DNA of 64,000 nucleotides from Octopus sinensis (Eukaryota): NCBI RefSeq assembly GCF_006345805.1, contig NC_043018.1, positions 11,656,001 through 11,720,000 on the forward strand. The letters run 5' to 3'. Below are positions 3,251 to 44,770 of this stretch, in pieces. Each line of letters opens with the position of its first letter. Position 1 is the stretch's first letter. The position numbers and the translations under genes are program-made. Below the pieces are notes generated by a model that made no database searches, was not told the DNA's origin, and saw only the letters and a program-made list of their open reading frames with translations.

Positions 3251-3283
<33 letters not shown>

Positions 3284-3330
3284 ATATATATGTGTATATA
3301 AATATGTGTGTGTATATATATGTATATATC

Positions 3331-7360: not shown

Positions 7361-7420
<60 letters not shown>

Positions 7421-8497: not shown

Positions 8498-9065
8498 TAT
8501 TTTCATATATTGACATGTTTGTGTTTGAACCTACTGAAAAAATATTTATAAGTATGTGTAGCCTTATATTTTTTTGTTTTTGGAAGTATGTCCAAATAAT
8601 TAATTTCTTAAAAAACATATTGCTTTGTATGTAATTAGATGTGTGTGTGTGTATCTGTATGTTTATGTGTACATATGTTAATGTGTGTGCATGTATGTGT
8701 GTTTGTATACATGTATGTATTAAAACAAAAGCTGGAAAATTTAGTATATTTTTTAATTCCACATTACGTATATTTCACTACAGTATTAGAAATGCATTGT
8801 GAATATTAGTAATAATAATAATAATAATAATATTATAAATAAATTCATAATAGGTATGGAATCTCCAATCCATAATTCTGCAAATAGGATTTACCAGAAC
8901 TTTCAGTTAGTATGTATGCGTTATTAAAATAGAACATCAATCCACACACTTTTGATTACTGCAATGTGTAGGTGTGGTTTATAACTACTTGAATATACTA
9001 TATACATACACATATATATATACACATACATATACATATATATATATATATACACACACACACAT

Positions 9066-9617
9066 ACATGAGGTCGTATCAATAAGTATTTGGGCTGTTG
9101 CCATAGTAACGAAGCTAACGCTCAGAGTGAAGCTGCTTGGCCAAAATTGACCTTGAATACTACTGTGCTCACTTCTGCTGTTTACAACAGTGCTTCAAAG
9201 GAAAGTATGTAGCGTGTGATCATCACATTGACCATGACAGAGAAAGTTGTCATGGCGATACCTGCTCAGAGGCCTATCCAAAGTGGATGGAGAGGAGTGA
9301 ATGAGCTGCATGCAAGTGTACGAGTGGTTCAGCCGTTTCCAAGGTGGCTGAGAATATGTCAATATTGAGAATGTTTTGGGAGACCTGCAACCAGCAGAAC
9401 TGAGGAAAACATTGCAGATGTGTGTGCAGCTGTGATGGGAAATCATCGAATCACCATCTGTGAATTATCAGAGGATGTGCAGATTAGTTATGAGACTCGT
9501 GTCTGCCAAGTTTGTGCCAAAACTGCTTCCAGCTGACCAAAAAGACACTTGGGTTTCAGTGGCACAAGATCTCCTTGATTGTGTGCCAAGATAGATGAAA
9601 ACTTTTTGAAAACCTTG
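9066..9617 (+). mobile_element. mariner-family relic (left end and N-terminal HTH region)
   Basis: Left end GAGGTCGTATCAATAAGT; translation VYEWFSRFQGG, RPATSRTEENI, RITICELSEDVQISY, RVSAKFVPKLL; many stops and deletions. Confidence 0.75.
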
Positions 9618-11715: not shown

Positions 11716-12390
11716 ACAAGCTGGCAGAATTGTTAACATGCCAGACATAGGGGTACTTCATCCATTTTTATGTTTTGAGTTCAAATTCTACTGAGGTCAA
11801 CTTTGCCTTTCAGGGTCGATAAAATAAGTAACGGCTGAGTGCTGGGGTCGATGTAATCAACTTGCCCCCACTCCCAAAATTGCTGGCTTTGTGCCCATAG
11901 TAGAAAGGGTTATTATTATTATTATTATTTAAGGCAGTAAGCTGGCAAAATTATTAGCACAGTGAACAAAATGCATAGTGGCATTTCATCTGTCTTTAAG
12001 TTATGAGTTCAAATTCCACCAAAACTACTTTTGCCTTTCTTCATTTAGGAGTTGATAAAATAAGTACCAGTTGAACACTGGGGTCAATATAATCAACCAG
12101 ATCCATCCCCTATAATTTCAGGCCTTGTGCCTATAGGACAAAGGATTGTTATTTTTTATTTAAGGTGATGAATTGGCAGAATTGTAAACATGCCAGAGAG
12201 AATGATTAGTGACATTTCTTGCAGGTCGATGCATTCTGAGTCCCAGTGCCACTAAGGCTGACTTTGCCTTCCATCCTTTTGGGATTGATAAAATAAGGAT
12301 CAGTCAAGTACTGGGATTGATGTAATCGACTAGCTGCCTCCCCCCCCCCCATAGATTTTGGGCCTTGTGCCTAATGTAGAAAGGATTATC
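11716..12390 (+). mobile_element. Three head-to-tail tRNA-SINE copies with a Deu/Nin-like central domain
   Basis: Each copy has AGCTGGCAGAA..TTAGCA/TTAACA...GAGTTCAAATTC..CTTTGCCTT..GGGTCGATAAAATAAG..CTGGGGTCGATGTAATC...GGCCTTGTGCC and an (ATT)n tail. Confidence 0.7.
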
Positions 12391-12791
12391 ATTATTTTTA
12401 GTCATTACTCGTTGCTAGGTAATGACCTAGTCAAGATGAAAGAGATTCTTCAGCAGAATCCTACTAAAATGATCTACTAATTGATACGAGCAACAACAAC
12501 CGGTTTCTTTTTTTCTCTTGAAACAAATTTAAATTCTATCTTTCACACACACACACACTCGCTCTCTCTCTCTCTCTCTCTCTCAACAATGAGTCTGTAT
12601 TGTCTTTATGTTGAAAGACATACAGAAGCACACGCACTACCCCCAAAATAACTATATATATTATATATATATATAAATAATTATTTTGTTGAAGTCTGTG
12701 TTTTGTCGACATCCTAGCACTTGAAGTTCTTGTGTTTTAATCAAACCTTTTCAGTTACTTTGGTGACAACACTACCTATCTGTCACACACA

Positions 12792-12832
<41 letters not shown>

Positions 12833-13396
12833 AGTCACTCAATAACAACTTTTTCTCCTCCCTTTCTTCTAAATATATGTTGTGACAGGGCCTATCTCCC
12901 CTTCTCATTCCTTCCCCTCTTCCTTCTCTCTACATAAATGTTGTTACAGACAGATAGATGGAAATAGCTTCTCTTTTATAACATAAGATTATTATTATTA
13001 TTTAATATTACTAGTATTATTAAATTCAGTATTATTTTTGAGAGCATTTGCTCATAAAACTTGAAACCAAAAGAAACAACCAAATTGACTGATTAGACAG
13101 TATCAAATATTGACAGTTCTGGTGCCATACCACTTTCAAGTAAGAGAAAAACCATAGTCTCAAGAATAACATTAAAAAAAAATATCTTAATTGTAGGTCA
13201 GATGTTACAACTCTATATTTATAGATATTTAATATGGCCAAATATCATCTGGTTCTTTGACAAGCTGTGATGTCTCTTAATACTAATTAACTAATCCTTT
13301 TTATTTTTTTAACAAGCTTTTATTATTTCATTTGTTGCAACAAAATCAATGAGATATTAATTTTATGACACATACTATATCTTTTTATCATTCCAG

Positions 13397-13581
13397 AATA
13401 CTTTGTATTATGATACGTATTGGGTGGGCCAACATGTCTGCTTGGCTTGGTTGTGTGCATTTCTTCTGCTTATTGTCCATTTCCTTCCTCCGCAATACCT
13501 TGATCTCCTACACAAATGTGCCCTCCATTTGGGACGTTGGCAAAAAGTTGAAGGACGTCATGCCCATGTACCATACAACCC
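13397..13581 (+). CDS. TMEM39A: TMEM39A/B-family protein, internal coding exon (third from last)
   Basis: ttccag|AAT ... CC|gtacgt; NTLYYDTYWVGQHVCLAWLCAFLLLIVHFLPPQYLDLLHKCALHLGRWQKVEGRHAHVPYNP resembles human TMEM39A as recalled (YYDMRWSCEH...[24 protein letters not shown]). Confidence 0.9.
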
Positions 13582-14437
13582 GTACGTATATTTAAATAAA
13601 ATCTCGATTGATAAGCACCAAACAGTTTCAGGGAAAATTTAATAGTAAAAGAAATTAAGCTGAAAAAAGGAGGGAAAGAAAAAGCTGCAAAAAGTAATAT
13701 AATTTGATTCAAGATGCTGATGATGATGTGTGGTTAAGAAGTTTGGTTCCCAACTACATGGCTTTAGGTTTATCCTCATTGTGTGACACTGGAGGCAAAT
13801 ACCTTCTACCGTAGCCAAGGGACTACTAAAGCCTTGTGAGTGGATTTGGTAGATGGAAACTAATATCCATTGCATATATGTTTGTTTACATGTGTGTGTG
13901 TATATATAAAGCTATCAATAATAGTATGTAAATGCTCGGTGTAAATGTATGTATGATGAGTTCAGGTGAAAAAGAAACAAAAGAAAACCTCAGAAAATGA
14001 TTGCAATAAAAATGTTCAGTTTTATCATAAACCAGAAAAGAGGTAAAAAATAAATGCATATAATCATCATCATCATCACCACCATTAACATCTGTTCTCC
14101 ATGCTTTGGTTGGAGATGGTTCAACAGGATCTGACAAGACAGAGGGTTCTGTTAGGCTCCACTGTCTGTTTTGATAGGGTTTCCTAAAACCAGCCAATTT
14201 AAAGAGTATAATGAGTACTTTTTTCATGGCACCAACAGTGGTAGAGATTGCTTCTTCTCAAAACTTGCAAGACTAAAGAGTCTAAAGGGGTTCCAAGAGG
14301 CTCCTTTAAAATAGGAAAGAGAGAGAGGGGGGGTGATGATTGAATATATTGAAAAATTAAGTTTAAAGTAATTATATTTTTGTTGTCTTATGAAATGTTA
14401 GTTTTATTTTTTGTTTTTTTTATATTTTTTCCCCCAG

Positions 14438-14558
14438 TTGGTCTGAATTGCAAGTGTGGCCTCCCGGGGTATTAGTTAAACATGTCAGAGGTTTGTTCCG
14501 AGCTGAAGGAATTAATATTACTGCTGAACCTGGTAATAGTATGCACAGTCGGTTTTAT
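14438..14558 (+). CDS. TMEM39A: TMEM39A/B-family protein, penultimate coding exon (121 nt)
   Basis: cccccag|T TGG ... TAT|gtaagt; WSELQVWPPGVLVKHVRGLFRAEGINITAEPGNSMHSRFY matches [24 protein letters not shown]..HARFY; phase fits the previous exon. Confidence 0.92.
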
Positions 14559-15639
14559 GTAAGTAGTCATTGTATTCTACACATTTACCCTTTTTATGTA
14601 TGTATAAACTGTTTTGCTAATGTATAACTACAGAGCATAGAGATGGTATAACTATAGAGCATACAGATGGTTGATTCAGCAAGCACTGGGCTCACTAGCT
14701 GATAGGTTAGTGGCTCACGTCTCGTCACCTGCCCTACTTTTAGTTCAGTGTACAGGTAGGAACACTGATTGATTTGAACAGTGGTAGCCAGGTAATATTG
14801 GTTTCAAATTTTGGCACAAGGCCAGCAGTTTTGGCACAGGGGGTAAGTTGATTACATCGACCCCAGTGTTCAGCTGGTGCTTATTTTATCAACCCCTGAA
14901 AAGATGGAAGGCAGTCGATTCTGGTAAAATTTGAACTGAGAATGTAAAGAGAGGCAAAATACTTCTAAGCATTTTTGTCTAGCATGGTAATGATTCTGCC
15001 AGCTTGCTGCCTTGTAACCAGGTAATATTAACTAGTGTTAGGTTTGTATGGATGTGGCTAAAACCCATGTGCCAAGTAGGTCTCTAATTAGCCACTTCAT
15101 AATCTAAAAATGTAAATCAAAATTTCTGTTGACAAGGTGTCTTAGCATCACTCAGTAAGACTGTTGTCAGCTGCTCACCAACCTAAATATTCTATCTATT
15201 TCTGTTCAGATTGACTGGGTTGGCTTCCCACACCTACCCTATTATATCATTCTAAACTTAAATAAACACATCATCAAAATCTTGAAGTTACAAGATAATT
15301 CAAAACAATGTGAATGAATAAGCATTACATTTGACAGAGCAATCTGAAGGAGCTAAAGGGTTAAAGCTACACGCACATCCACACTTAGTTTACATCTGAC
15401 GTCTGGACCCCCATCTTGTTCAGGATATTGATCTAATATTATATGTCCAATCATATAGAGTGGAACACAATCAACGGCTTCAGTTGCTAATGTTAACTCA
15501 CAAAAAACAGTATATATACATATATATACAAAAACACTTAGCATATTATATTATATTGATCATTTAACTGTATAATTGGTTCACATCAGTCTAGAAAAAA
15601 TAAACTTATGTCTTTCTTTCCTGTTCTTTCATTTTTCAG

Positions 15640-15870
15640 TTTCTTTTCCACTGGCCGTTAAGAATTACCAATTATTTGCTGTTTCTGTCTTTCACTTTGG
15701 TGATTTACCAATTTGTACGGCTCCTCCTCTGTACAGAATGGAACCACATTGTATCACTAGCATTGATGCTTTTCTGCTGCGATTATACGTTATTCAAACT
15801 CTTCCGCGACCGAGTCATATTGACTAGCACATATAAAGATGAGGAAGAGAAGGGCGATAATTCTCACTAA
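15640..15870 (+). CDS. TMEM39A: TMEM39A/B-family protein, terminal coding exon
   Basis: ttttcag|TTT; FLFHWPLRITNYLL...EWNHIVSLALMLFCCDYTLFKLFRDRVIL...* matches [38 protein letters not shown]; TAA at 15868-15870; AATAAA at ~16205 and ~16288. Confidence 0.92.
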   Translation, partial: FLFHWPLRITNYLLFLSFTLVIYQFVRLLLCTEWNHIVSLALMLFCCDYTLFKLFRDRVILTSTYKDEEEKGDNSH

Positions 15871-17559
15871 TCAACCCACAATTTGAAAGTGATCTAATCT
15901 GAAATCTACAAAGTCCACTTGAAACATTGGCCAGTCATAAAGAAAATCCTTCTCTGTCTCAGTTTTCTTTTTCCCACCTGGTCATGAAAAAAGCTGTTTG
16001 AGGAAGAAAATAATTCCAGCAGCTGAATTGATTACCAATTTTTTTTCTTTCTTTTCAAACTTTAAAATATCTCTTTCCAAGAGAATTCAATCCAGTTTCA
16101 AACAAAAGGTTTTGAAAGAGCTTCTGAGGAAATCAATACTTTTAACCTTTTAACAGATTGTTGTGAAATGTGAAACAGTATCTTTTCCTTTCTTCCTGCT
16201 CTGCTAAATAAAAGAAAAACCTAAATAATATGTGATATAGGGACCAAAAATATTTATATTTTTTAATACTTCTTTTATGAAGAAATCAATAAAAGCATTC
16301 AGTCAACAAGTTTGTTTTTCTTTTCCTCCTTTTTGATTTTTGCTTTGTCTTCAGTATTCTACCTCATCGTCATCATATCTGCTTTTTCCATGGAGGTATG
16401 CATTAAAGGAAATTTCTGGAAGCAAATGTTAACAGGCAGGTGCCTTCCTGTCATCAACCCTTACCTATTTTCACTTGTCTCCACAAAAAAAGAAATTCTT
16501 TGAATTACCACACCCCTCCCCCTTGGACAATATAGTCCAGAAGAATACAAAGGTTGAATGCCTTGCTTTAACTTCAGCCTTTACCTCTTTGAGTCCTAGA
16601 GGATATTATCATAACATACAGTATATCAAACATTTTTAGATTTGGCACAGCCCGTCCCTCTCCTGGTTTGACCATTGCTGATTTCTTCCAGATGGAGAGA
16701 AGGAGATAGAAAGAAAGAATAAGAGAAAGGAAAAGAATCAGCTCTAGTACGCGACTGGTACATTTTGTCAACCCTGATAGAATGAAAGGCAAAATTGACC
16801 TCATGGCATTTGAACTCACTGCATAGAAAGCTGTAATAAATCAATTAATTCAACTGATGCTTGAACAACTCTGATTCTCAGCCAAAATTAAGCACATCAA
16901 AAAAGGTCCTCAAGAAGACCCGTTACAGTAGCTTGTACAGCAGAGTACCATGTCTTGGTGACACTCACTTGCTTCTAAAGACTGGATAGTCTTAGCCGAA
17001 ATAACTTTGGTCCTAACTCAACTCAATCAGAAAAGACCAGGAACTTAACAAAATCTACTACCATTGCTACTTACTTACTTACTTACTTACTACTACTACT
17101 ACTACTACTCCTCTCATAGGCCGAAAGTGATGTTGGTTTGTTTTTTTTCTGAATGTAATTTTACCAAATTACATTCCCTTCACCATTGGTTGTTGGCTCA
17201 TCCTTTCTCTTTCATGTCTTGCTTTGCACTCATCCCCAAACGTGACGTCTGTTTTTCAGTGCAGCCTCCATCTATTCTATTTCTCATATATTGTCAGACA
17301 ATTGTATTTTGAAAATTGTTTAGCCCATGGTCAGCCCTGATCTAGAAAATCCATGATCAGACATTATGCTTATGTTTAATTTGTCCACCCCACCATTATA
17401 AATAGTGTGCCTAGAACTGGATAATCCAATGCATCATTTTTTTTTTTATTGAAGGAATGTGATTTGAGGGAGATGTAATTGTTATTTTAACAGATTGAGT
17501 AACCAAGTAGAAGCGTCTTGGCTCTTGTCAAAAATGTTACAGTGTGCTCAACAAGTATT

Positions 17560-18010
17560 TTAATACCATTTTGTCCTCTCCTCTACATCTCCCTACACAT
17601 TGTGCTCATTACCTCCACCATCTTTCATTATGTCTTCCTGTTCCTCTTCTGCTTCATTCCACATTCATTTTCATCACTCCTCTCACCCAGTCATTTCCAT
17701 CCTTCCTCATTTCTCTTCACAATATCCATTCACTGACTCAATTTCTATCATTCTCAAAAATTCATTAATATATCTTTTTGCGATGCTCTTTTACAATCAG
17801 ATGCTCTTTCTGCCACTATTTCTCCTCTCCCAATAATATTCCATTCATCAATCAAACCATTCTCATTTCCTTTCTTACTCTCCTCCATGTTCATTCCCCC
17901 ATGTCTCACTTCTATGAATTTCTTCTGCATGCAACTTCACCTTTTTCAGCTGCAACACTTTCTTTCCCATTAGTACACTTCTCCATTCTAAGAACTTTCA
18001 TGTATATCTC
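17560..18010 (-). mobile_element. Highly decayed RTE-like LINE fragment
   Basis: Minus strand gives traces such as HRSETWGMN and RKEMRMV, typical of the post-RT region of RTE ORFs; purine-rich strand bias. Confidence 0.4.
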
Positions 18011-18339
18011 ACTCTAACCATTGCCACCAAATTTATTCCAGTTTCCAATATATGTAAGCATTTACAAACTTCTTGTTCACTACCTATGATGCAAAATCTA
18101 CCTTGTGGAATAGATATTTTCAGCAATATTATTATAAATTATGCTGTATCCAACTTCTTACAGTGATGAATTGCACCATTCCTTGCTACCCATTTACTGG
18201 TAAATAGACATTACCTCATTTCTTTTCAATAAGAATTGGAGGATCAGTTCTCATGGTCTTTGCTGGCTTTACAGATCATTGTGAGTTAAATGCAGCTCAG
18301 ATATAACGGTACTGTTAAGAACTTTGTTTCAAAGCTGAG

Positions 18340-18745
18340 GGGCTGCACCAGATTCCAATCTGATTTGGCGTGGTTTCCATGGCTGGATGCCCTTCCTAAT
18401 GCCAACCAGTATACGAGTGTAATGGATGCTTTTAGGTGCCACTGACACAGGAGTCAGTTGTGTGGCACCAGTATCTGCCACAACTGTGATTTCACTTGGC
18501 TTGATGGGTTTTCTTCTCATGCTCAGCATATTGCCAAAGGTCTCAGTCATTTGTCATTGCCTCCATGGGGCCCAATGCTCTAAAGGTGCTTTTACATGCC
18601 ACTGGTATGGGTACTAGTTATGGGACACTGGCATCGGCCACTCTGCCTCCATGAGGCCCAATGCTCGAAAGGTGCTTTTTATATGCCACCAGCACAGGTG
18701 ATAGTTACATGACACCAGCATCAGCCACAACTACGATTTCACTGA
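18340..18745 (-). mobile_element. RTE-tail SINE-like element containing dispersed, diverged copies of the 145-bp satellite monomer
   Basis: Reverse complement contains GTGGCATGTAAAAGCACCTTTAGAGCATTGGGCCCCATGGAGGCAATGACAAATGACTGAGACCTTTGGCAATATGCTG...CCCATCAAGCCAAGTGAAATC, then the TTGGCATTAGGAAGGGCATCCAGC tail. Confidence 0.85.
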
Positions 18746-19166
18746 AAACAGTTGTGCTATCTTTGTGGAAATGGAGTCTCCTGGTCACCCATCTGTGCAA
18801 CCTGTCTTAGCCATCTTCCTGAGTTTTTATAGGGGATCAGAAGCCAAATTATAGAGTTTTCAAAGAAACCCTGTCCATGCCATCACTTCATGTTGATTGT
18901 TCGGTTAATAGACCAATCACATGACTTGTTTGTGATGTCAGACTGAGTATCCAGGGATTTGGTTTCAAATCACAGCTAGAGTTCTTTGAACTTTCTCCTG
19001 CCAGTTCTTATTCTAGAAACTAAATTTTCAGCACACCCCACACCATTGCTAATTAGATCACTGAGGTAATTAGAAATTATCTACTACCTCTTTGTGTTTT
19101 TTTGCACCTATGCACCTGCCATATTGCCTTTTATGTGAAAAGAAATATTCAGGAGGAGGATGGTGG

Positions 19167-19198
<32 letters not shown>

Positions 19199-20544
19199 AG
19201 GAGAAGAACAAAAAGAAGAGTATAATTGATAATATCGACTGCTGTACATATTTTATAGTCAAAATTAATCCTGTCAGGATTTGCACTCAGAATGTGAAGC
19301 AAAGTATTATGTCTGCCACTCCCCATAGCAGTTTAAGGATGAATGGCAAAAACTTGCAAAATAGAGAAACTGCAACTTCTTAATGGTGTAGTATACAAAA
19401 AAAAAAAAAATTTAAGAAAAGGTATTAATTGCCAGTTAGTGATTATAGTGACAAGAAAATTAACAGATACATCATTTGAGACAAAAGAATAGAAATTGTA
19501 TCATGAGATTAAGCAATAACAATTCAAATAAATGCAGTGGACAACTTCTAAAAAAGCTTTTATGTCTGGAGTATTTTGTCATTGTACAATGATTTACATT
19601 ACTTTGCTATGAAGGTTAAAAGCCGAAAGAATTAAATATGATCTTAGCCTGTTGTGTCCCTTGTGTCTCATTGAAACATAACCCACACCTTGATTCTCAT
19701 CCAAAGAGAAACCAACACCTTGATCAATAAGCATTGATTGTCAATTAATCTTGATTACTGTCTTTATTAGCAAAATATGTTTGTAGTCAAAGTAAAGCCA
19801 TTTTTTATTCATCTGATGGAAACATATTTCTTTCAAATGGTGCAATGAACACATTAAAAATATTAATTCAATCCATTGCTCAGCAAAACACCATGACCTC
19901 TGGCCTAAGAGCTGTGAGCTGAATCTATGACTCTGAACAAGTCCCACATCTGAGCAGTCTCAGCAGCCTCAGAGTCCCTGAAAGGAGTTACAGGAGATAC
20001 CCTTCCTCGTCCGAGTTAACAGCCATGAAAAATCATACATTATAAAAGAAAAGTGAATTTCTGTCTGTCTGTCACAACATCTATTAACGGGACAGAAAGA
20101 AGGGGAGGGATCAAAATATCCCTAAGTATTTTTAGAAGGGGAGGAGAAAGGTTGTTGTAGAGAACAATATAGGAGAAAGAGAGAGTGTGTGTAGATAGAT
20201 AGATATACAGATAGTATTGTCACTATCATAATAATTAAAAAGTTTTGATTAAAAACATGGGAATTTTAAGTACAAATCTGTCCACACAGTTTCAAAGAAA
20301 AAAATATTTTCATAATATAACAATATAGATAGTTATTTTTTTGGTTGTTTGTGTGTTTCTGTTTGTCTGTCAATGCAACACATACTTTAAAAAAAGACTT
20401 TCACTATAACGACAGGTTGTTGTTGTTGTTGAGAGAGAATGTGTGTGTGTGTGTGTGTAAAAGATAGATAAGAAGATTGTTGTCATCATAGTAACTAATT
20501 AGACTTTCACTATGTAACTGTCTACTATTACAAGAGGGTATACT

Positions 20545-24257: not shown

Positions 24258-24857
24258 GGGACGTAGTCAGTCCACCTGTGCATACCTTCCTTCTTGTGAC
24301 ACTTGTGAAGACCTGTTGAGGCAAGTGAGAATCGAATCAAATCAAATCAAATCGAACCAAATCAAAATAGATGAACATCAATGGAATTTGTATCCTTGTG
24401 GTACCAGTGCCGGTGGCACATAAGAAAACCATCCGAACGTGATCGTAGCCAGTACCGCAACGACTGGCCTCCGTGCTGAGGGCACGTAACAAACACCATC
24501 CGAGCGTGGCCGTCCGCCAGCCCCGTCTGGCACCTGTGTCGGTGACACATAAGAAAACACCATCCGAGCGTGGCCGTCAGCCAGCCTCGTCTGGCACCTG
24601 TGTCGGTGGCACATAAAAAACACCATCCGAGCGTGGCCGTCTGCCAGCCTCGTCTGGCACCTGTGTCGGTGGCACATAAAATCACCCACTACACTCTCGG
24701 AGTGGTTGGCGTTAGGAAGGGCATCCAGCTGTAGAAACACTGCCAGATCTGACTGGCCTGGTGCAGCCTTCGGGCTTGCCAGACCCCAGTTGAACCGTCC
24801 AACCCATGCTAGCATGGAAAGCGGACGTTAAACGATGATGATGATGATGATGATGAT
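24255..24857 (+). mobile_element. RTE 3' fragment or SINE with three ~63-bp internal tandem units and a (GAT)n tail
   Basis: Units CACCATCCGAGCGTGGCCGTC..GCCAGCC..GTCTGGCACCTGTGTCGGTGGCACATAA at 24494, 24558 and 24621; ends GCATGGAAAGCGGACGTTAAACGATGATGAT. Confidence 0.85.
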
Positions 24858-25160: not shown

Positions 25161-25664
25161 CGCATTAGAGTGCGTGTATAGAATAGAAGTGGGAGAAGAA
25201 AATCTAGTAAATGAATTTGAAGAGAGAGAAAGAGGAGTGTAAAAGCATTAACATAACCAGAGAATAAAGAACGGCAATATAAGAACTTGATACTCGAAGA
25301 ATATAGCAACAGTGTACAGAAACACAGAACTTAGTAATTCTAAAAGTGGCGGTAAAAATACTAAAAAAAAAAAAACTGGGAGAAGTTCCAGCACTTCGAT
25401 GAAATTATTGACTCTTCGATTTCAAGACAATTAAATGAACAAATTGCTTCATTTAATTTTCGGAATTAATTTATTATACAACAAAATAATTTTTTATTTG
25501 TTGATATAATCGGGAGGTGGGTTTCAAATCGCCAAACTACAGAGTGTTGTGAGAAGCAGATCAGTTTCAGGAACGACCTCAGAAGTGAGAGACAATCAGA
25601 AACCAGAATCGTCTTAGAATATAGAACTTTCTTCTATTCTTTGTGGGGAAGTGAAATCAAAATA

Positions 25665-25742
25665 ATGCCAAAAAGCATTCGTATTACGAACAAACTAGTT
25701 CGGTGTTTTCTAGCCGAGTTTCTGGGTACTTTCATACTCTTG
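25665..25742 (+). CDS. AQP3/7/9/10-like: Aquaglyceroporin, distal first coding exon (1a): MPKSIRITNKLVRCFLAEFLGTFILL
   Basis: AATAATG start, MIP TM1 motif AEFLGT, 78 nt, phase-0 donor |gtaagt. Confidence 0.8.
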
Positions 25743-26721
25743 GTAAGTAATTATTTTCTTCTTGTTTAGCCCCACCGATTCCTGATAGCGCAAACTTATG
25801 ATTAAAAGCGTTCCACTCCTGACTATTCAACAGTGAATCTAAGAGTATAATTATGTTATCCATTAAAATATATAAAAAAAAAGTTTGATACTGAGGAGAT
25901 TTGGCTGCTAATTTTAGCCGTTTCAACGACCACACAGAGGATGGTTTTTGTGAGCTGGTAACTCGTTTGCGCGTATGTGGGTGTATGTATGTGTGTGTGC
26001 ATGTGTTTGTGAATGTGTGTGTGTGTGCATGTGTGCTTATGCCTGTGTGTGTAAAGGTTTCTTCCAACCAATATCCAATGCCAGGTACAGTTTTATAAAA
26101 TTCAAGTTTAACTTTCTCAGAGTCGGAGACACTCAACGGTACAACAGAACAAAGTTTATCCGTGATTATTATTTGAATATAAATCTGTGGATCAGATTTT
26201 CGGATCAACGATTCCCTCAAAAGTTCTCAGTTTCGACGGAGACTTTTCCAATTTATTTCTCATTACAGCCTCCAAAATAATAGGGACTCGGGGAGCATCT
26301 TTTTATGAAAAAAAATTTCGGAAAATTTATGATTTTAACCAATTTTGTTTTGCCCAATTCACTTAAAAACAAAGGAAGATGCCTTTTCGGCAAAAACTAT
26401 AGATTTTCAGACGAAAACGTAATTTAAGGATGATTTGGCTGTTGTTTCTAACATACCCCATGACCACCTTCTTTCTTTCTTCCTCACTCACATGTTTTGA
26501 TGGTTTTCAATATTTTTCTACATTTGAACATATTTAAGCTATTAAAAAAAAAAATTGAAAATTTATGATTTTTTTCCCTCTCTACATTTTCTGTTTATAA
26601 TTTTATAAAATAGTGAAAAGTCTGAGAAAGTAATTGAGATTTATCCAAGGATTTTGGAAAGTGGTGTGAAAAAAGTTAATTTATTTTAATAGCATAACTT
26701 TCTGTTAGCAAATATTTTCCT

Positions 26722-27050
26722 GCACACACACACACAACACACACAGAACACACGCAACACACACACACACAACATACACACAACACACACACACGCAACA
26801 CACACAACACACACACAACACAACACACACACAACACACACACAACATACACACACACACACACACGCAAGACACACACAACACACACACACACGCAACA
26901 CACACACAACACACACACACACACCACACACACGCAACACACACGCAACACACACACACACACGCAACACACACAACACACACACAACATACACACACGC
27001 AACACACACGCAACACACACACAACACACACACACACGCAACACACACAC

Positions 27051-27094
<44 letters not shown>

Positions 27095-27148
27095 ACACAC
27101 ACGCAACACACACACACACACACGCAACACACAACACACACACACACG
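26722..27148. repeat. Degenerate (CA)n array with CAA/CGCAA interruptions
   Basis: Direct reading. Confidence 0.95.
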
Positions 27149-27564
27149 CAGAGCCTCGCTTGTTCGGGGGTGGGGGTGGGGGGTGGAGCTATTAATTTAA
27201 ATTGCAATTTTTTTGTTGTTGCTTGTTTCCCAAGAAAATATTGAAAACCATCAATAGAGGTGAGAGTGACAAAGAAAGGAGTAAGGGCGTCGAGGGATGT
27301 GCTTGAAACAACAGCCAAATTCCTTTAAATCCCCTGAAAATAATATTTACAAAAATTTTTTTTTTATCAAAATGGTTTCGGTAATCTTTCGGTATTGGTT
27401 TCAGAACTGTTAAATGTTTACAGCTGTTCGTTCGTTAGTTTCCGTAGAAAATTATTATTATTATTTTTTTTTACTTTTGGTTTCATGACGCATCGAAGAC
27501 AATATTTGCTTTGAAGTTGGAAAGTGAAAGAGGAGGAGGGAGACGGGTGCGTGTATGTACGGGT

Positions 27565-29445
27565 ACACACGTACGTACACCCATTATCTTTCTTAGACAC
27601 ACGTACGTACACCCATCTTTCTTAGACACACGTACGTACACACATTATCTTTCTTAGACACACGTACGTACACCCATCTTTCTTAGACACACGTACGTAC
27701 ACCCATTATCTTTCTTAGACACACGTACGTACACCCATCTTTCTTAGACACACGTACGTACACCCATTATCTTTCATAAACACATGTACGTACACCCATC
27801 TTTCATAGACACACGTACGTACACCCATTATCTTTCATAGACACACGTACGTACACCCATCTTTCTTAGACACACGTACGTACACACATTATCTTTCATA
27901 GACACACGTACGTACACCCATCTTTCATAGACACACGTACGTACACCCATTATCTTTCATAGACACACGTACGTACACCCATCTTTCTTAGACACACGTA
28001 CGTACACCCATTATCTTTCTTAGATACACGTACGTACACCCATCTTTCTTAGACACACGTACGTACACCCATCTTTCTTAGACACACGTACGTACACCCA
28101 TTATCTTTCTTAGATACACGTACGTACACCCATCTTTCTTAGACACACGTACGTACACCCATTATCTTTCTTAGATACACGTACGTACACTCATCTTTCT
28201 TAGACACACGTACGTACACCCATCTTTCTTAGACACACGTACGTACACCCATTATCTTTCTTAGATACACGTACGTACACCCATCTTTCTTAGACACACG
28301 TACGTACACCCATTATCTTTCTTAGATACACGTACGTACACCCATCTTTCTTAGACACACGTACGTACACCCATTATCTTTCTTAGATACACGTACGTAC
28401 ACCCATCTTTCATAGACACACGTACGTACACCCATTATCTTTCATAGACACACGTACGTACACCCATCTTTCATAGACACACGTACGTACACCCATTATC
28501 TTTCATAGACACACGTACGTACACCCATTATCTTTCTTAGACACACGTACGTACACCCATTATCTTTCATAGACACACGTACGTACACCCATCTTTCTTA
28601 GACACACGTACGTACACCCATTATCTTTCATAGACATACGTACGTACACCCATCTTTCATAGACACACGTACGTACACCCATTATCTTTCATAGACACAC
28701 GTACGTACACCCATCTTTCTTAGACACACGTACGTACACCCATTATCTTTCTTAGACACACGTACGTACACCCATCTTTCTTAGACACACGTACGTACAC
28801 CCATTATCTTTCATAGACACACGTACGTACACCCATCTTTCATAGACACACGTACGTACACCCATTATCTTTCATAGACACACGTACGTACACCCATCTT
28901 TCATAGACACACGTACGTACACCCATTATCTTTCATAGACACACGTATGTACACCCATTATCTTTCATAGATACATGTACGTACACCCATTATCTTTCAT
29001 AGACACACGTACGTACACCCATTATCTTTCATAGACACACGTACGTACACCCATTATCTTTCATAGATACATGTACGTACACCCATTATCTTTCATAGAC
29101 ACACGTACGTACACCCATTATCTTTCATAGACACACGTACGTACACCCATTATCTTTCATAGATACATGTACGTACACCCATTATCTTTCATAGACACAC
29201 GTACGTACACCCATTATCTTTCATAGACACATGTACGTACACCCATCTTTCATAGACACACGTACGTACACCCATCTTTCATAGACACACGTACGTACAC
29301 CCATTATCTTTCATAGACACACGTACGTACACCCATTATCTTTCATAGACACACGTACGTACACCCATTATCTTTCATAGACACACGTACGTACACCCAT
29401 CTTTCATAGACACACGTACGTACACCCATTATCTTTCTTAGACAC
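27565..29445. repeat. 29/32-bp minisatellite (~60 units), unit ACACACGTACGTACACCCA(TTA)TCTTTC(T/A)TAG
   Basis: Direct reading; unit starts 27597 and 27626 give 29 bp, and an extra 3 nt (TTA) gives 32 bp. Confidence 0.97.
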
Positions 29446-30014
29446 GAACATGCATGCGTGTGCGAGCGCATGTCTCTTTCCCCTTTAACTTCCAACTTCA
29501 AAGCAAATGTTACCAAAAGTAAATAAATAAAAAATTTTCAAGGAATTTAACAAACGAAGCTGACAGTTCTGAGACCAATATCAAGTGATTGTTAAGGTTC
29601 CCCACCATGGTTTTTAAGTGCACTGTGCCATTAAAACTGGCTGAAATCGGTCCGGAGTGAGGTAGGGAGAGGTGATGGGGTGAAATAAATCACAAATTTT
29701 CCAAAATTTTTTCATAAAAAGATGTCCTCCCCCCCCACTATCATTTTCATGGTGAAAAAAATCACAAGTCCCTTCTAGGAGATGGCCCTGCTTGATATGT
29801 AAGAAGGGTGTTGATAGAAATTCCATAGAAATCCTACATTTCGGATTCAATCCTTCATCAGGGGGCAGAGAAAAAAGTCAAACAAAGTTTACATCCTCTC
29901 AGCTTGAAAAACAGGCTGCAGCTGAATAATGGATGCAGAATAACATGAACTGCTAACGGGAAACAGAAAGGAGAAGGAAAAAGATGATGGAGAGAGTAAA
30001 TACCACCTCCCCTG

Positions 30015-30290
30015 CTCTTCCTCTCTTCTCAAACACATTAAATCTGCAATACCTTTCTCTTAATTTCTTCGCTTTCAACGACTTTGCAGCATTGGTTCGG
30101 ATTTTGAATCCCATTGCAAAACGATGTGACAGTTTTTTTCTAAATCACTTGTCGACCTGGCACTCCACCGAGCGCAAGCCATCAACCGCACTGCAGCTCT
30201 CCTACCATCTTCACGCACTTCCACCGACTGTATTCCACTCTCTCTCATCTACCACCCGTACATTCTCCCTCCAGCATGGCCACAGTCACA
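30015..30290 (+). mobile_element. Penelope-like RT C-terminal/linker fragment, with an inverted hammerhead relic upstream (29833-29863, minus strand)
   Basis: KHIKSAIPFS*FLRFQRLCS, LVDLALHRAQAINRTAAL, IPLSLIYHPY. Confidence 0.7.
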
Positions 30291-31059
30291 CAACCAAAAC
30301 AAATAAAACAATTAAAAAAACTATGCCATTTTAATCCCAAGCAATACCAGGTATCTCTGCTAGTATATATTTATTTGTCTCCCACTACACCACCACTACT
30401 TGACAACTGGCATTGGTTTGTTTACATCCCTGTAACTTAGCAGTTTGGGAAAAGATTGATAGAATAAGTACCAGTCTTAAAAATAAGTACTGGGATCAAT
30501 TTGTTGGACTAAACACTTCAAGTGGTGCTCCAGCATAGCCATAGTCTAATGACTGGAATAAGTAAAAAGTTAACGATATAGCTTCAATATCCTCCTTGAA
30601 TCTTTCCTGCACCCGTTTTGAGAACCACTGAAGGCCTTAATAAACAACTGATTGTAATTTAGGTGCAAAGCCAGCATTTTAGAGGAAAGGGGTTAGAAGC
30701 CTGCATTTTATTTGATTGACCCCAAAAGAACAAGAGGTAAAGTTGACCTTGATGGTACTTGAACACAGAACATAAAGGGTTGTAAGAAATATTGGTTTCA
30801 AATTTCAGCACAATGCCAGCAAGTTTGGGTTAGCAGGTAAGTCAATTACAGTTCTCAACTGGTGTTTGTTTTATGACCAAGAAAGAATGTAAGAATGAAA
30901 GGTGAACTCAACCATGGCGAAAGTTGAACTCAGAACGTAAAGATGAATGAAACACCGCTGAGCCTTTTGCCTGGTGCAGTATCGATTCTGCCAGCTCGCC
31001 ACCCTTCGGCTGGAAGAAATATTGCAAGGCCAATCCACTGGCCTTTAAGTTTAATGAAC

Positions 31060-31093
<34 letters not shown>

Positions 31094-31586
31094 TTCCTAT
31101 ACATTTACATATGTTGTGTGTGCGTACGTTTACTGCCCAGTGTTCAAATTTGAGGTGAAAAATGAGATAAAAGGAGAGTGGGGACACAAACAACTGAAAT
31201 GCTAATATGAGTAGTGGTGGGAGGTTGAATTTGAAAGGAAACAGAAGACTATGAGAAATGACAACTGGCAAAGAGAGGCCTGAAGAGAAGAATGCACAAA
31301 GATAATAGGTTAAGATCAAAGTACAAGTGTTGACGAGGGGAAGGAAGGGAGGGAGAGAGAAAAGGAAGAGTGTGAGAGAAGAGAGAAGGAAGAGGGGAAA
31401 GCAAAAGAAGAGAAAAACTACAAGTGGGAGAAGAAAAACAACCGAAAGGCATTCAAAGTGACATAGATCAGCCCTTATTTTAAGCTTGAATGAACAAAAT
31501 TTAATGGTGACATAAAACAACGACCAGAATCATTTGAAGTTTATTTTACTTAATTTATATTCATCCCGTGTTTGTTTGTTGAAACT

Positions 31587-31664
31587 ATGCTGAAATTTAA
31601 GCCTATTAGAAACAAACTAGCTCGATGTTTTCTTGCGGAGTTTCTGGGTACTTTCATACTCTTG
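31587..31664 (+). CDS. AQP3/7/9/10-like: Aquaglyceroporin, proximal first coding exon (1b): MLKFKPIRNKLARCFLAEFLGTFILL
   Basis: AAACTATG start, AEFLGT motif, 78 nt, phase-0 donor |gtaagt. Confidence 0.88.
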
Positions 31665-32955
31665 GTAAGTAATCAATTAAATTGCTATTAGATTGTTTCA
31701 AACCCCAGATCATCCTTTCCCCTTGATAAGTATATGCAAGGCTATATCATATTCAATGTAATATGAAGGAGTTTTAACTGCTATTTCTATTTTTTTTGTC
31801 TTGCAAGTTCTTAGAGATGCTGTCAGTGCAGGTGCCACTTAAAAACACCCAGTCCATGCTGTAAAGTGGCTGGCATTTGGAAGGACATCCAGCTGTAAAA
31901 AACTTGCCAAAACTGACCTCACCTGTGCTTGTGCCATGTAAAAAGCACTAAGTCCACTCTGTAGGGTGGTTGGTGTTAGGAAGGGCATCCAACTGTAAAA
32001 AGTTCTGCCAAAACAGTTACAGAAGTCTGGCACATATTTCTACCTGGCTGGCTCCTGTGAAACTGTCCCACCCATGCCAGCATGGAAGGCATACGTTAAA
32101 TGATGATGATGAAGATGATGAAAGAACTGTCGGGAATCGACAGTGTTGATTGTGCACATTAGATTACTGTGTCAGTTTCATATCGTACCTACGTTTGGCA
32201 TAGTATAGAGCATGTTCTACATGAACATATTAATTCTGCGAAAGGTTATTCTAGATAACCATATCCAAATATTTGGGTGATACTATTCTACATCCTTGTG
32301 CACACCCCGATGTCGTTATAACATTGTTGGCAACAAGATATTCGAACCCCCATAGAATTCCTCTCAACACATGGCTTATGATGCTCCCCCACTACATCTG
32401 CTCGTGATCAGAGATGTATATATCACCAACCACTAAGGGACATGCTCAACTAGTTAAGGTCAAACAACCGACAAGCAAATCCGTGGTATTGAGCAGAATA
32501 TTTACGGTAACCCATCCTTTTATAACAAGACAAAACATGTACATGATAACATTTCCAATCGGTTAAGATCAGAAACCATGAGAACCACTGCCTGGTATTA
32601 CATCGGGGCGGTGGCGTCGTCATCATCATCATCATTATCATCAACACCACCACCACCATCATCATCATCATCATTACTATCACTACTATTATTATTATTA
32701 TAATTATTATTATTATTATTATTATTATTGTGGTAAGCTGACAGAATTGTTAGTGGAATGGACAAAATGTTGAACAGCTTTTCTTTTGGTTTTACGTCCT
32801 GTGTTCAAATGCCGCTTAGTTTTTCATCCTTTTGGGGTTGATTAAATAAGTACAAGGTGAACACTGGGGTCAATGTAATTGGTTTTCCCCTCCCCTCAAA
32901 AACTGCCGGCCCTGTGCCAAAATTTGAAATGACTATTATTACTATTAATTTTCAG

Positions 32956-33082
32956 TTGGTTGGAATTGCTGGTGTAGCACAGGTTGTCCTCAGTGAGAAG
33001 GCTGATGGAGATTTTTTCAGTATTAATGCATGCTGGGGTATGGCAGTGACACTTGGAGTCTATGCATCTGCAGAGGTATCAG
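32956..33082 (+). CDS. AQP3/7/9/10-like: Aquaglyceroporin exon 2 (127 nt)
   Basis: tttcag|TTG...TCA G|gtaagt; LVGIAGVAQVVLSEKADGDFFSINACWGMAVTLGVYASAEVSG. Confidence 0.93.
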
Positions 33083-36658: not shown

Positions 36659-36796
36659 GAGCTCATCTGAATCCTGCAGTCACTGTAGCACTTGCTATCT
36701 TCAGAAAGTTCTCTTGGAATCATGTTCCAGTGTATTTTGTAGCTCAGTACCTTGCGAGTTTTGCTGGGGCTGCTGTTGTGTACTTTGTTTACAAAG
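36659..36796 (+). CDS. AQP3/7/9/10-like: Aquaglyceroporin exon 3 (138 nt; first NPA)
   Basis: tcacag|GA GCT CAT CTG AAT CCT GCA...AAA G|gtatgt; GAHLNPAVTVALAIFRKFSWNHVPVYFVAQYLASFAGAAVVYFVYK. Confidence 0.96.
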
Positions 36797-38664: not shown

Positions 38665-38783
38665 ATGGCCTTGACAATTTTGATGGTGGAATAAGGCAGG
38701 TGACCGGGCAGAATGCTTCAGCTGGTATCTTTGCTACATATCCTAAAAGCTTTGTCTCTACAGGCAGGTGCTTTGCAGATCAG
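38665..38783 (+). CDS. AQP3/7/9/10-like: Aquaglyceroporin exon 4 (119 nt; loop C)
   Basis: ttctag|AT GGC...CAG|gtaggg; DGLDNFDGGIRQVTGQNASAGIFATYPKSFVSTGRCFADQ (AGIFATYP Glp motif). Confidence 0.95.
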
Positions 38784-40052: not shown

Positions 40053-40270
40053 ATCGTTGGCACTGGGTTGCTGACTTTATGCATCGCTGCAATAACAGAT
40101 GGCAAAAATATGAAACCTCAAAAAGGCCTCCTACCATTTTCTATAGGAAGTATTGTGTTTATGATTGGTGTAACTTTTGGTTTCAATTGTGGCTATGCAA
40201 TCAACCCTGCAAGGGACTTGTCACCTCGCCTATTTACCCTGATGGCTGGCTGGGGCACTGAAGTTTTTAG
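40053..40270 (+). CDS. AQP3/7/9/10-like: Aquaglyceroporin exon 5 (218 nt; NPARD)
   Basis: ctttag|ATC...TTT AG|gtgtgt; IVGTGLLTLCIAAITD...GFNCGYAINPARDLSPRLFTLMAGWGTEVF. Confidence 0.96.
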
Positions 40271-43432: not shown

Positions 43433-43611
43433 TTTCAGAGACTACAACTGGTTTTGGGTTCCAATTATAGGGCCCCACATTGGTGCAATTTTAGGAATAT
43501 TGCTCTATGACGTCACTGTTGGTCTTCACTGGGAAAGTTCTGAACCAGAGATTGATCACGAAGCTAAAAATCTTAAGGATGGTGCATTTGCTTCTATGAC
43601 TTTAGAAAAAG
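43433..43611 (+). CDS. AQP3/7/9/10-like: Aquaglyceroporin exon 6 (179 nt)
   Basis: ttctcag|T TTC AGA GAC...AAA G|gtatgt; FRDYNWFWVPIIGPHIGAILGILLYDVTVGLHW... Confidence 0.92.
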
Positions 43612-43965
43612 GTATGTACATGATCCAGTTTTCAACTGCAAAGTTCAATCAAAACTATTCTATTAAATCTATTCATTTGTTTACAATGAGATTATCTTAT
43701 CTTCAACAGCTGCTCTGAAATATTTACTATATGACTTCTTTCTCAGCCACATGGTTTTGGGTTCAAGTCCACTCTGTGGTATCTTGGGCAAATGTCTTGC
43801 ATTTTAAAGTGATCTAAATTAAAACCTTTCACCAAAATTTCATGGTATTTATGAATCAAACACCAACTTGATAATGACGAAGTTATCTTACAAGATTTTT
43901 CAACAATTGAAATGAAACTGCACATATCAGCAGAAATGTGGCAATAGAATTTCACTATATACGCA

Positions 43966-44711: not shown

Positions 44712-44770
44712 TTGCTGCCACAACATCAAGCCAGCGTCTTATGGAATCGAATCTTACCGACACAAATTGA
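44712..44770 (+). CDS. AQP3/7/9/10-like: Aquaglyceroporin exon 7 (C-terminal tail and stop): VAATTSSQRLMESNLTDTN*
   Basis: ttttcag|TT GCT...TGA; phase matches the exon 6 donor; total CDS 918 nt = 305 aa plus stop. Confidence 0.7.

What the first reader, a model, noticed from the sequence alone, without database searches (positions are those of the whole stretch)
25665..33082. Aquaglyceroporin with two duplicated, intact alternative first coding exons
Seen: two 78-nt exons 5.9 kb apart encode MPKSIRITNKLVRCFLAEFLGTFILL (25665-25742) and MLKFKPIRNKLARCFLAEFLGTFILL (31587-31664). Both end in phase 0 with donor gtaagtaat, and only one exon 2 (32956) follows; no other aquaporin exons were seen between them. 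In the last 54 nt they differ at 4 sites, 3 of them synonymous, while the first 8 codons are diverged. ACCAGAATC lies 63 and 64 nt upstream of the two ATGs, so the duplication included 5' UTR. Inference: a promoter-plus-first-exon duplication giving two N-terminal isoforms of one channel under separate promoters, both under purifying selection. This is loosely analogous to N-terminal isoform control in AQP4 M1/M23, but made by exon duplication.
Basis: partly seen in the sequence, partly recalled or inferred. Interest (0 to 1): 0.75.

Follow-up and report, generated by a model that had tools for sequence, protein, structure and literature searches.

The report
Octopus aquaglyceroporin with twin first exons
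An octopus glycerol/water-channel gene carries two related copies of its first coding exon, giving two channel versions that differ at only six residues near the start. The feature is real and at least ~34 million years old, but it is an ordinary gene architecture and public RefSeq annotation already lists both versions.

Summary
The window is Octopus sinensis chromosome CM016880.1 (11,656,001-11,720,000). It holds one aquaglyceroporin gene (AQP3/7/10-like) with seven coding exons and two paralogous 78-nt ATG-containing first exons. Exon 1a is at 25665-25742 and exon 1b at 31587-31664. Both end in phase 0 with gtaagtaat, ahead of a single exon 2.

RefSeq already lists both products for this locus: isoform X2 (XP_036368211.1) starts with 1a and isoform X1 (XP_029649373.1) with 1b. 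The O. vulgaris model uses 1a and the O. bimaculoides model uses 1b. Both exons are intact and in the same order in three independent chromosome-scale assemblies, so the duplication is at least ~34 My old and not an assembly artefact.

The exons diverge between species at 5.1%, like the constitutive exons (3.3-6.1%). This is not significantly slower than their flanks (7-11%). Detectable paralogy is only about 97 nt. The flanks do not align, so "promoter duplicated" rests on one 9-mer (p about 0.03).

Argonauta, Mytilus and Haliotis relatives have one first exon. A nemertean (Lineus) gene has three.

Verdict: real, ordinary, already annotated; isoform function unknown.

The parts
25602..25610 (+). 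ACCAGAATC motif 63 nt upstream of the exon 1a ATG. It may be a remnant of a duplicated 5' UTR or a start-site element.
   Evidence: Conserved in O. vulgaris and O. bimaculoides. There are 3 copies in the window against 0.56 expected.
25665..25742 (+). Alternative first coding exon 1a (26 codons, MPKSIRITNKLVRCFLAEFLGTFILL). It ends in phase 0 with donor gtaagtaat and is the N-terminus of RefSeq isoform X2.
25716..25751 (+). 36-nt block identical to 31638-31673. It spans the end of exon 1a and the first 9 intron bases.
27565..29445 (.). 61-nt (29+32) satellite array inside the 1a-1b interval. It is not homologous to the gene. Its copy number explains most of the difference in 1a-1b spacing between species.
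31523..31531 (+). ACCAGAATC motif 64 nt upstream of the exon 1b ATG.
31587..31664 (+). Alternative first coding exon 1b (26 codons, MLKFKPIRNKLARCFLAEFLGTFILL). It ends in phase 0 with donor gtaagtaat and is the N-terminus of RefSeq isoform X1.
32956..33082 (+). Common exon 2 (rest of TM1, loop A, TM2). It is the single acceptor for both first exons.
36659..36796 (+). Exon 3, with the first NPA motif (HLNPAVT).
38665..38783 (+). Exon 4.
40053..40270 (+). Exon 5, with the second NPA motif (INPARD).
43433..43611 (+). Exon 6. The acceptor was corrected to 43433 from the RefSeq protein (..EVF|SFRDYNW).
44712..44770 (+). Coding part of exon 7 (VAATTSSQRLMESNLTDTN, stop TGA).

Best explanation
This is one aquaglyceroporin gene of Octopus sinensis, which RefSeq calls 'aquaporin-7-like'. 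Its closest solved relatives are AQP3, AQP10 and AQP7. Its first coding exon exists in two tandem paralogous copies 5.9 kb apart.

Each copy has its own ATG in a good context (A at -3). Each encodes the short cytosolic N-tail plus the first half of transmembrane helix 1. Each ends in phase 0 at an identical strong donor. Exon 1b has no convincing acceptor upstream of its ATG; exon 1a has one weak candidate 15 nt upstream.

Inferred mechanism: the isoform is chosen by where transcription starts. A transcript starting upstream of 1a splices the 1a donor to exon 2 and removes 1b with the intron. A transcript starting inside that intron, upstream of 1b, splices the 1b donor to exon 2.

The products are two 305-residue channels with identical pores. 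They differ at six residues (positions 2, 4, 5, 6, 8 and 12). These lie in the juxtamembrane tail that aligns with the AQP3 segment carrying its YRLL sorting signal. The likely consequence (inference) is separate transcriptional control, possibly with isoform-specific trafficking or phosphorylation. Isoform 1a has Ser4 and Thr8; isoform 1b has no Ser or Thr in the tail. Permeability should not differ.

The duplication predates the split between O. vulgaris/sinensis and O. bimaculoides (~34 My). The sharply bounded, nearly identical 3' part of the exon is best explained by a short gene-conversion tract before that split, together with protein-level constraint on TM1.
For: **Shown**
- The gene model translates to 305 aa identical to XP_029649373.1.
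- It matches Pfam MIP at 171 bits against a cut-off of 25. The best solved relatives are AQP3 at E=6e-75, then AQP10, AQP7 and GlpF.
- RefSeq isoform X2 starts with the 1a peptide and X1 with the 1b peptide. The O. vulgaris model CAI9738696.1 uses 1a. The O. bimaculoides model XP_014767631.1 uses 1b.
- The window is an exact substring of the O. sinensis assembly.
- Both exons, intact and with GT donors, lie in the same order ahead of a single exon 2 in O. vulgaris and O. bimaculoides.
- The paralog-specific states of the first 24 nt are kept across species: 0-1 differences between orthologs against 9-10 between paralogs.
- Divergence between O. sinensis and O. bimaculoides is 5.1% in each first exon, 3.3-6.1% in exons 2-6, and 7.4-10.6% in the flanks.
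- For codons 9-26, pN/pS between 1a and 1b is about 0.1.
- The species split times come from PMC10700109.

**Inferred**
- Promoter choice. Exon 1b has no ATG and only two AG dinucleotides in its last 80 nt upstream, with no pyrimidine tract before them.
- Gene conversion. For codons 9-26, pS between 1a and 1b is 0.22, about the same as between orthologs (0.15-0.21). Against Argonauta it is 0.74-0.89. The flanks of the two copies cannot be aligned.
- A sorting or regulatory role for the tail. This rests on the alignment to AQP3, the YRLL motif and the PKA-regulated binding of the AQP7 termini to PLIN1 (PMC8825993).
Against: - I could not reach read-level transcript data. Searches for transcript-derived protein fragments found none from octopus. 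Use of both exons therefore rests on automated gene models, which can be seeded by protein alignments.
- Conservation of the exons is not significantly stronger than that of their well-conserved flanks. A 26-codon ORF could stay open by chance at 5-10% divergence.
- No promoter could be identified computationally.
- RefSeq also has a second transcript encoding X1 and an X3 that starts in exon 2. The 5' end of the gene is therefore more complex than two promoters.
- Exon 1a has a weak candidate acceptor (ctttcttctattctttgtggggaag|) 15 nt upstream of its ATG, so it might also be used as an internal exon.
- The L2P difference in O. bimaculoides 1b shows that part of the isoform difference is not fixed.
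Confidence: 0.8

Rival explanations
1. Both exons are used, but only the promoters matter. The duplication split the gene's regulation between two promoters (tissue or stage), and the six amino-acid differences are functionally neutral.
For: All pore-forming residues are in shared exons. The N-tail is very short, 13 residues before TM1. Position 2 differs between species in 1b, L in O. sinensis and P in O. bimaculoides. In codons 1-8 the pN/pS ratio between paralogs is about 0.6, which suggests relaxed constraint.
Against: The 1a-specific and 1b-specific tail sequences are almost unchanged over ~34 My, with 0 and 1 changes in 24 nt. The same segment carries sorting and regulatory signals in mammalian AQP3 and AQP7.
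Confidence: 0.35
2. One of the two exons, most likely 1a, is an untranscribed or rarely used relic of a partial duplication. The RefSeq and O. vulgaris models that contain it are artefacts of automated prediction.
For: I obtained no read-level evidence. Exon conservation is not significantly above that of the flanks. A short ORF can survive by chance.
Against: - Two independent pipelines produced models starting at 1a: NCBI Gnomon for O. sinensis, and the transcript, protein and ab initio pipeline for O. vulgaris that used Iso-Seq (PMC10700109).
- In all three species 1a keeps its ATG, open frame, a GT donor with gtaagtaat, and an A at -3.
- 1a has no indels, whereas the flanks do.
Confidence: 0.12
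3. Exon 1a belongs to a collapsed or misassembled paralogue, so the arrangement is an assembly artefact.
For: None found. The interval between the exons holds satellites that are hard to assemble.
Against: Three independent chromosome-scale assemblies show the same order, 1a then 1b then a single exon 2, with collinear unique sequence around both exons. The species are O. sinensis, O. vulgaris and O. bimaculoides. The two exon copies differ at 14 sites that are stable across species.
Confidence: 0.01

Closest known systems
Variable first-exon arrays made by tandem exon duplication (UGT1A and clustered protocadherins; tandem exon duplication as a source of alternative exons, Kondrashov & Koonin 2001 and Letunic et al. 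2002; all cited from my own knowledge)
   Same: There are paralogous 5' exons in tandem. Each has its own start codon and donor, and each splices to one set of common downstream exons. The exon is chosen by the transcription start.
   Different: There are only two copies, and the variable part is tiny: 26 codons with 6 differing residues, not a whole domain. Separate promoters are inferred here, not shown.
RefSeq models for this locus: O. sinensis aquaporin-7-like isoform X1 (XP_029649373.1, XP_036368212.1) and isoform X2 (XP_036368211.1)
   Same: The proteins are identical to the two products deduced from the window.
   Different: The records are automated predictions. They do not state that the two first exons are paralogues, and no paper on them turned up.
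Lineus longissimus aquaporin-7-like gene (isoforms X1/X2 versus X3; XP_064646827.1, XP_064646842.1)
   Same: It is an aquaglyceroporin with tandem paralogous first coding exons that encode the N-tail and the first half of TM1. They end at the same phase-0 intron position ahead of a single exon 2.
   Different: There are three copies, one apparently not in the listed isoforms. They are much more diverged (about 55% amino-acid identity) and only about 0.7-1 kb apart. The duplication is probably independent, since Argonauta, Mytilus and Haliotis relatives have one copy.
AQP4 M1/M23 isoforms
   Same: One channel gene yields N-terminal variants with an unchanged pore, and the N-terminus controls behaviour in the membrane.
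   Different: M23 is an N-terminally shorter product of the same reading frame (my own knowledge). Here both isoforms have 305 residues and use different, duplicated exons.
Mammalian AQP3 / AQP7 / AQP10 and E. coli GlpF (aquaglyceroporin clade)
   Same: These are the best solved-structure matches. The protein has two NPA motifs and NPARD after the second. The ar/R positions read W53, G, Y and R by alignment.
   Different: The N-tail is among the shortest of the relatives compared, with 16 residues before the AEF motif against 17-41 in the others. The AQP3 YRLL motif is replaced by TNKL in 1a and RNKL in 1b.

Membership tests
MIP / aquaporin superfamily (Pfam PF00230) | Significant match to the MIP profile over six transmembrane segments | tested here: met
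   171 bits against a cut-off of 25, covering residues 10-252, for both isoforms.
MIP / aquaporin superfamily (Pfam PF00230) | Two NPA motifs in the two half-helices | tested here: met
   HLNPAVT at residue 73 and INPARD at residue 205.
Aquaglyceroporin (GLP) clade | Closest relatives are AQP3/7/9/10 and GlpF rather than water-selective AQPs | tested here: met
   AQP3 at 6e-75, AQP10 at 1e-71, AQP7 at 8e-65 and GlpF at 2e-46.
Aquaglyceroporin (GLP) clade | Wide ar/R filter (aromatic, Gly, aromatic, Arg) and Asp after the second NPA-R | tested here: met
   In the alignment W53 aligns to AQP3 F63, and GFNCGYAINPARD aligns to GFNSGYAVNPARD. Which AQP3 residues form the filter is from my own knowledge.
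Aquaglyceroporin (GLP) clade | Glycerol or small-solute permeability | not testable with these tools
   This needs an oocyte or proteoliposome assay.
Tandem-duplicated alternative first exons | Two or more paralogous 5' exons in tandem upstream of one common exon | tested here: met
   The two exons are identical at 64 of 78 nt, share a 36-nt identical block, and precede a single exon 2.
Tandem-duplicated alternative first exons | Each copy has its own start codon and 5' splice donor and joins the common exon in frame | tested here: met
   Both have an ATG with A at -3, end in phase 0 and are followed by gtaagtaat. Both spliced products give 305 aa.
Tandem-duplicated alternative first exons | Both copies are actually spliced to the common exon in mRNA | tested here: inconclusive
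   Gene models for both exist. No read-level or transcript-derived sequence could be retrieved.
Tandem-duplicated alternative first exons | Each copy has its own promoter or transcription start | not testable with these tools
   This needs CAGE, 5' RACE or ATAC data. There are only indirect hints: no acceptor before 1b, and no upstream ATG in the last 80 nt.
AQP4 M1/M23-type isoforms | Long and short N-termini from two in-frame starts of the same coding sequence | tested here: not met
   Both isoforms have 305 aa and come from different exons.
Mutually exclusive internal exons (splicing-chosen) | Both alternative exons have 3' acceptor sites and are flanked by common exons on both sides | tested here: not met
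   Both exons contain the start codon. 1b has no plausible acceptor and 1a has only a weak candidate. This was by sequence inspection only.

The most novel reading that the evidence does not exclude
First-exon duplication may be a recurrent, selected way for aquaglyceroporin genes to diversify their N-terminal tail and promoter while keeping one pore. It arose independently at the same phase-0 intron in Octopus (two copies, at least 34 My old) and in the nemertean Lineus (three copies). In Octopus the TM1-coding half and the donor may be kept identical by gene conversion, while the cytosolic tail is held different. That would imply isoform-specific trafficking or regulation of glycerol, urea or ammonia transport in cephalopods.
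Probability: 0.2. Interest if true: 0.4.

Novelty: already known. Interest (0 to 1): 0.2.

Why it matters
It matters little beyond annotation. Both N-terminal isoforms are already in RefSeq, and tandem-duplicated alternative first exons are a textbook route to isoform diversity.

Three modest points are new:
1. The two first exons are paralogues that have been kept for at least ~34 My.
2. The pattern of similarity suggests a short conversion tract rather than simple purifying selection.
3. The same architecture occurs in a nemertean aquaglyceroporin.

If the two tails direct different localisation or regulation, they would be a compact natural system for studying N-terminal control of aquaglyceroporins.

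Tried and rejected
- **Protein searches with short queries.** Queries of 69 aa and 114 aa were meant to find transcript-derived fragments spanning the 1a/exon 2 or 1b/exon 2 junction. They returned only distant, mostly microbial MIP fragments, so they gave no transcript evidence.
- **Look-ups not on record.** The exact look-up of isoform X2 and of the Owenia protein found nothing.
- **Paralogue flanks.** Local alignment of 300 nt upstream and downstream of the two exons scored no better than shuffles (p = 0.19-0.44 upstream, 0.07-0.29 downstream). I therefore rejected 'a large duplicated block including the promoter is still visible'.
- **SINE-like repeats.** The repeats near both exons (24394-24853 and 31813-32121, families D9, D10 and D12) sit upstream of 1a but downstream of 1b, at a different spacing (about 7.2 kb against 5.9 kb). 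They are independent insertions, not part of the duplication.
- **First version of exon 6.** I placed the acceptor at 43439 with an open end. That was wrong, and the RefSeq protein fixed it at 43433, with exon 7 at 44712.
- **Literature.** Searches for octopus aquaglyceroporin isoforms found nothing relevant.
- **Promoter scanner.** The sigma-70 promoter and terminator scanner was not used because the sequence is eukaryotic.
- **A third copy.** A third copy of the first exon in the window was looked for and not found.
Full report
**1. The observation**

Exon 1a (25665-25742) encodes MPKSIRITNKLVRCFLAEFLGTFILL. Exon 1b (31587-31664) encodes MLKFKPIRNKLARCFLAEFLGTFILL. Both are followed by gtaagtaat.

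They differ at 14 of 78 nt: 10 in the first 24 nt and 4 in the last 54 nt. Of the last four, three are synonymous and one changes V12 to A. A 36-nt block that crosses the exon-intron boundary is identical in both copies, with none expected by chance. ACCAGAATC lies 63 and 64 nt upstream of the two ATGs.

A tblastn scan with an AQP3 probe, a scan for NPA motifs, and tblastn with the full octopus protein all find just one copy of every other aquaporin exon. None lies between 1a and 1b, and there is no third first-exon copy.

**2. What the locus is**

A full-length search returned a cluster of Octopus proteins. A 39-kb piece of the O. sinensis assembly (GCA_006345805.1, CM016880.1) is an exact substring of the window. 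That places the window at 11,656,001-11,720,000 of the chromosome.

The gene model that reproduces the RefSeq protein exactly is:

| Exon | Window coordinates |
|---|---|
| 1a or 1b | 25665-25742 or 31587-31664 |
| 2 | 32956-33082 |
| 3 | 36659-36796 |
| 4 | 38665-38783 |
| 5 | 40053-40270 |
| 6 | 43433-43611 |
| 7 (coding part) | 44712-44770 |

This gives 918 nt and 305 residues.

The protein matches Pfam MIP at 171 bits. Its best solved relatives are AQP3 (6e-75), AQP10, AQP7 and GlpF. It has NPA motifs at residues 73 and 205, NPARD after the second, and an AQP3/GlpF-like filter by alignment. It is an aquaglyceroporin.

**3. The two-isoform reading is already public**

| Record | Species | Length | Starts with |
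|---|---|---|---|
| XP_036368211.1 (isoform X2) | O. sinensis | 305 aa | MPKSIRITNK... (1a) |
| XP_029649373.1 / XP_036368212.1 (isoform X1) | O. sinensis | 305 aa | MLKFKPIRNK... (1b) |
| XP_036368213.1 (isoform X3) | O. sinensis | 251 aa | a Met inside exon 2 |
| CAI9738696.1 | O. vulgaris | 305 aa | 1a |
| XP_014767631.1 | O. bimaculoides | 320 aa | 1b-type (MPKFKPIRNK...) |

The O. vulgaris annotation combined Iso-Seq and RNA-seq transcripts, protein alignments and ab initio models (PMC10700109).

I could not reach read-level evidence. Two short-query protein searches found no octopus transcript fragments. Use of both exons therefore rests on these automated models and on conservation.

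**4. Conservation and age**

Both exons are present, intact and in the same order ahead of a single exon 2 in O. vulgaris (8,245 nt apart) and in O. bimaculoides (8,271 nt apart). In the window they are 5,922 nt apart. The O. sinensis to O. vulgaris difference comes mostly from the copy number of a 61-nt satellite between the exons. Three independent chromosome-scale assemblies rule out a collapsed paralogue.

O. bimaculoides split from the vulgaris/sinensis lineage about 34 My ago (PMC10700109), so the duplication is older than that.

The paralog-specific 5' parts are almost frozen. Orthologs differ at 0 sites (1a) and 1 site (1b) in 24 nt, against 9-10 differences between paralogs.

Each first exon differs from its O. 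bimaculoides ortholog at 4 of 78 sites (5.1%) with no indels. Exons 2-6 differ at 3.3-6.1%. Flanking sequence differs at 7.4-10.6% and has indels. This fits coding constraint, but with so few sites it is not statistically distinguishable from the well-conserved flanks.

The best Argonauta hians relative (57% identity) has a single first exon. No second copy lies in its 10 kb upstream or in intron 1. Single copies were also found for a Mytilus edulis and a Haliotis cracherodii relative. All of these share the same phase-0 intron position.

**5. How far the duplication extends, and why the 3' part is so similar**

Recognisable paralogy covers about 97 nt (25660-25756 against 31582-31678, 81% identity). 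It has a sharply bounded core at 25682-25751 that is about 91% identical to the 1b sequence at 31604-31673 (O. vulgaris 1b, whose exon sequence is the same as in O. sinensis).

Upstream and downstream flanks align no better than shuffled sequence. The only upstream signal is the in-register 9-mer ACCAGAATC. Its post hoc p is about 0.03. It occurs 3 times in the window against 0.56 expected, and it is conserved at both exons in all three species. It could be a remnant of a duplicated 5' UTR or a shared start-site element. 'Promoter duplicated' is therefore weakly supported.

For codons 9-26, synonymous divergence between 1a and 1b (pS 0.22) is no greater than between orthologs (0.15-0.21). Against Argonauta the same codons are saturated (0.74-0.89). 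If the duplication were as young as pS suggests, the flanks should still align, and they do not. If it were old, synonymous sites should have diverged.

The simplest reconciliation is an inference: an older duplication followed by a short gene-conversion tract over the TM1-coding half and the donor. The tract would predate the species split, because three of the four 3' differences are shared by both species. Protein-level constraint also acts, with pN/pS of about 0.1. Alternatively the duplicated unit was only about 100 nt.

**6. Mechanism**

Both exons carry the start codon with A at -3 and identical donors. Exon 1b has an in-frame stop 36 nt upstream, no ATG in the last 80 nt, and no plausible acceptor. 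Exon 1a has no upstream ATG within 150 nt and only a weak candidate acceptor 15 nt upstream.

The most likely mechanism is therefore alternative transcription initiation. Each start site commits the transcript to its own donor, which joins the common exon 2. This is inferred, not shown.

The two proteins differ only at residues 2, 4, 5, 6, 8 and 12, in the 13-residue cytosolic tail and at the entry of TM1. All pore residues are shared. The tail aligns with the AQP3 segment that holds the YRLL basolateral sorting motif: TNKL in 1a and RNKL in 1b (PMC8825993). The termini of AQP7 mediate PKA-regulated binding to perilipin 1. Isoform 1a has Ser4 and Thr8, and isoform 1b has neither.

I consider separate regulation certain if both exons are used. 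Isoform-specific trafficking or phosphorylation is possible but untested.

**7. Comparison with known systems**

The architecture belongs to a well-known kind: tandem-duplicated variable first exons spliced to common exons, as in UGT1A and clustered protocadherins (my own knowledge).

It is not an AQP4 M1/M23-type arrangement. Here the isoforms are equal in length and come from different exons.

It is not unique among aquaglyceroporins. The Lineus longissimus gene has three tandem paralogous first exons (L005 9301-9405, 10001-10147, 10970-11065) ahead of one exon 2, at the same intron position. Two of them are represented by RefSeq isoforms X1/X2 and X3.

Other invertebrate aquaglyceroporin isoforms that I looked at differ by N-terminal extensions or by C-termini, not by duplicated exons.

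**8. Verdict**

The feature is real and correctly described. The core interpretation is probably right (0.8). It is already recorded in public annotation and is an ordinary mechanism.

What is new is small: the paralogy and age of the two exons, the likely conversion tract, and the parallel case in a nemertean. Interest is 0.2.

Noticed in passing
L005 (Lineus longissimus OU342993.1) 9301-9405, 10001-10147, 10970-11065; exon 2 at 11984: A nemertean aquaglyceroporin gene has three tandem paralogous first coding exons, each ending in a GT donor at the same phase-0 position. The most upstream copy has in-frame ATGs but is not among the isoforms listed.
   Followed up: partly
window 27565-29445: A 61-nt (29+32) satellite of about 31 copies lies between exons 1a and 1b. 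The orthologous array is about 4.4 kb in O. vulgaris (L002 11695-16102). In O. bimaculoides only one 36-nt stretch (L001 3192-3227) matched it. This accounts for most of the different 1a-1b spacing between O. sinensis and O. vulgaris.
   Followed up: partly
window 48873-63998: A 145-nt satellite of about 104 copies at 99% identity runs to the end of the window. It produces many spurious minus-strand ORFs. Dispersed relatives at 18463-18743 and 3898-3986 suggest it derives from a dispersed repeat.
   Followed up: partly
window 43612-43727; L001 (O. bimaculoides): The 320-aa O. bimaculoides model XP_014767631.1 reads through the exon 6 donor (..LEKGMYMIQFSTAKF..) instead of splicing to exon 7 as in O. 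sinensis and O. vulgaris. The same read-through frame is open in the window. It is probably an annotation difference rather than a real C-terminal isoform.
   Followed up: no
window 32956-33082 (exon 2): RefSeq isoform X3 (XP_036368213.1, 251 aa) starts at a Met inside exon 2 and would lack TM1. A second transcript also encodes X1. Together these imply further 5' transcript variants beyond 1a and 1b.
   Followed up: no
window 4348-5433 (-) and 5445-5849: A 361-aa ORF has a reverse-transcriptase domain (RVT_1, 106 bits) and a weak PHD/C1-like zinc finger match, so it is a retroelement. A 35-nt tandem repeat (11.6 copies, 98% identity) lies directly next to it.
   Followed up: partly
window 7989-8456 (+): A 155-aa ORF matches a DDE_3 transposase domain (E=1.3e-10). 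It is a Tc1/mariner-like transposon fragment.
   Followed up: partly
window 24394-24853 and 31813-32121: Copies of a SINE-like element lie upstream of 1a and downstream of 1b. The first has an internal 63-nt triplication. They are not part of the exon duplication.
   Followed up: partly
window up to about 15870 (+): The 3' end of a neighbouring gene lies upstream on the same strand. Its 466-aa product has a Tmp39 (PF10271) domain.
   Followed up: no
L006 (Mytilus edulis OY782959.1) 1-8904 and 10001-19759: In Mytilus the aquaglyceroporin is duplicated as whole genes in tandem, rather than as first exons.
   Followed up: no
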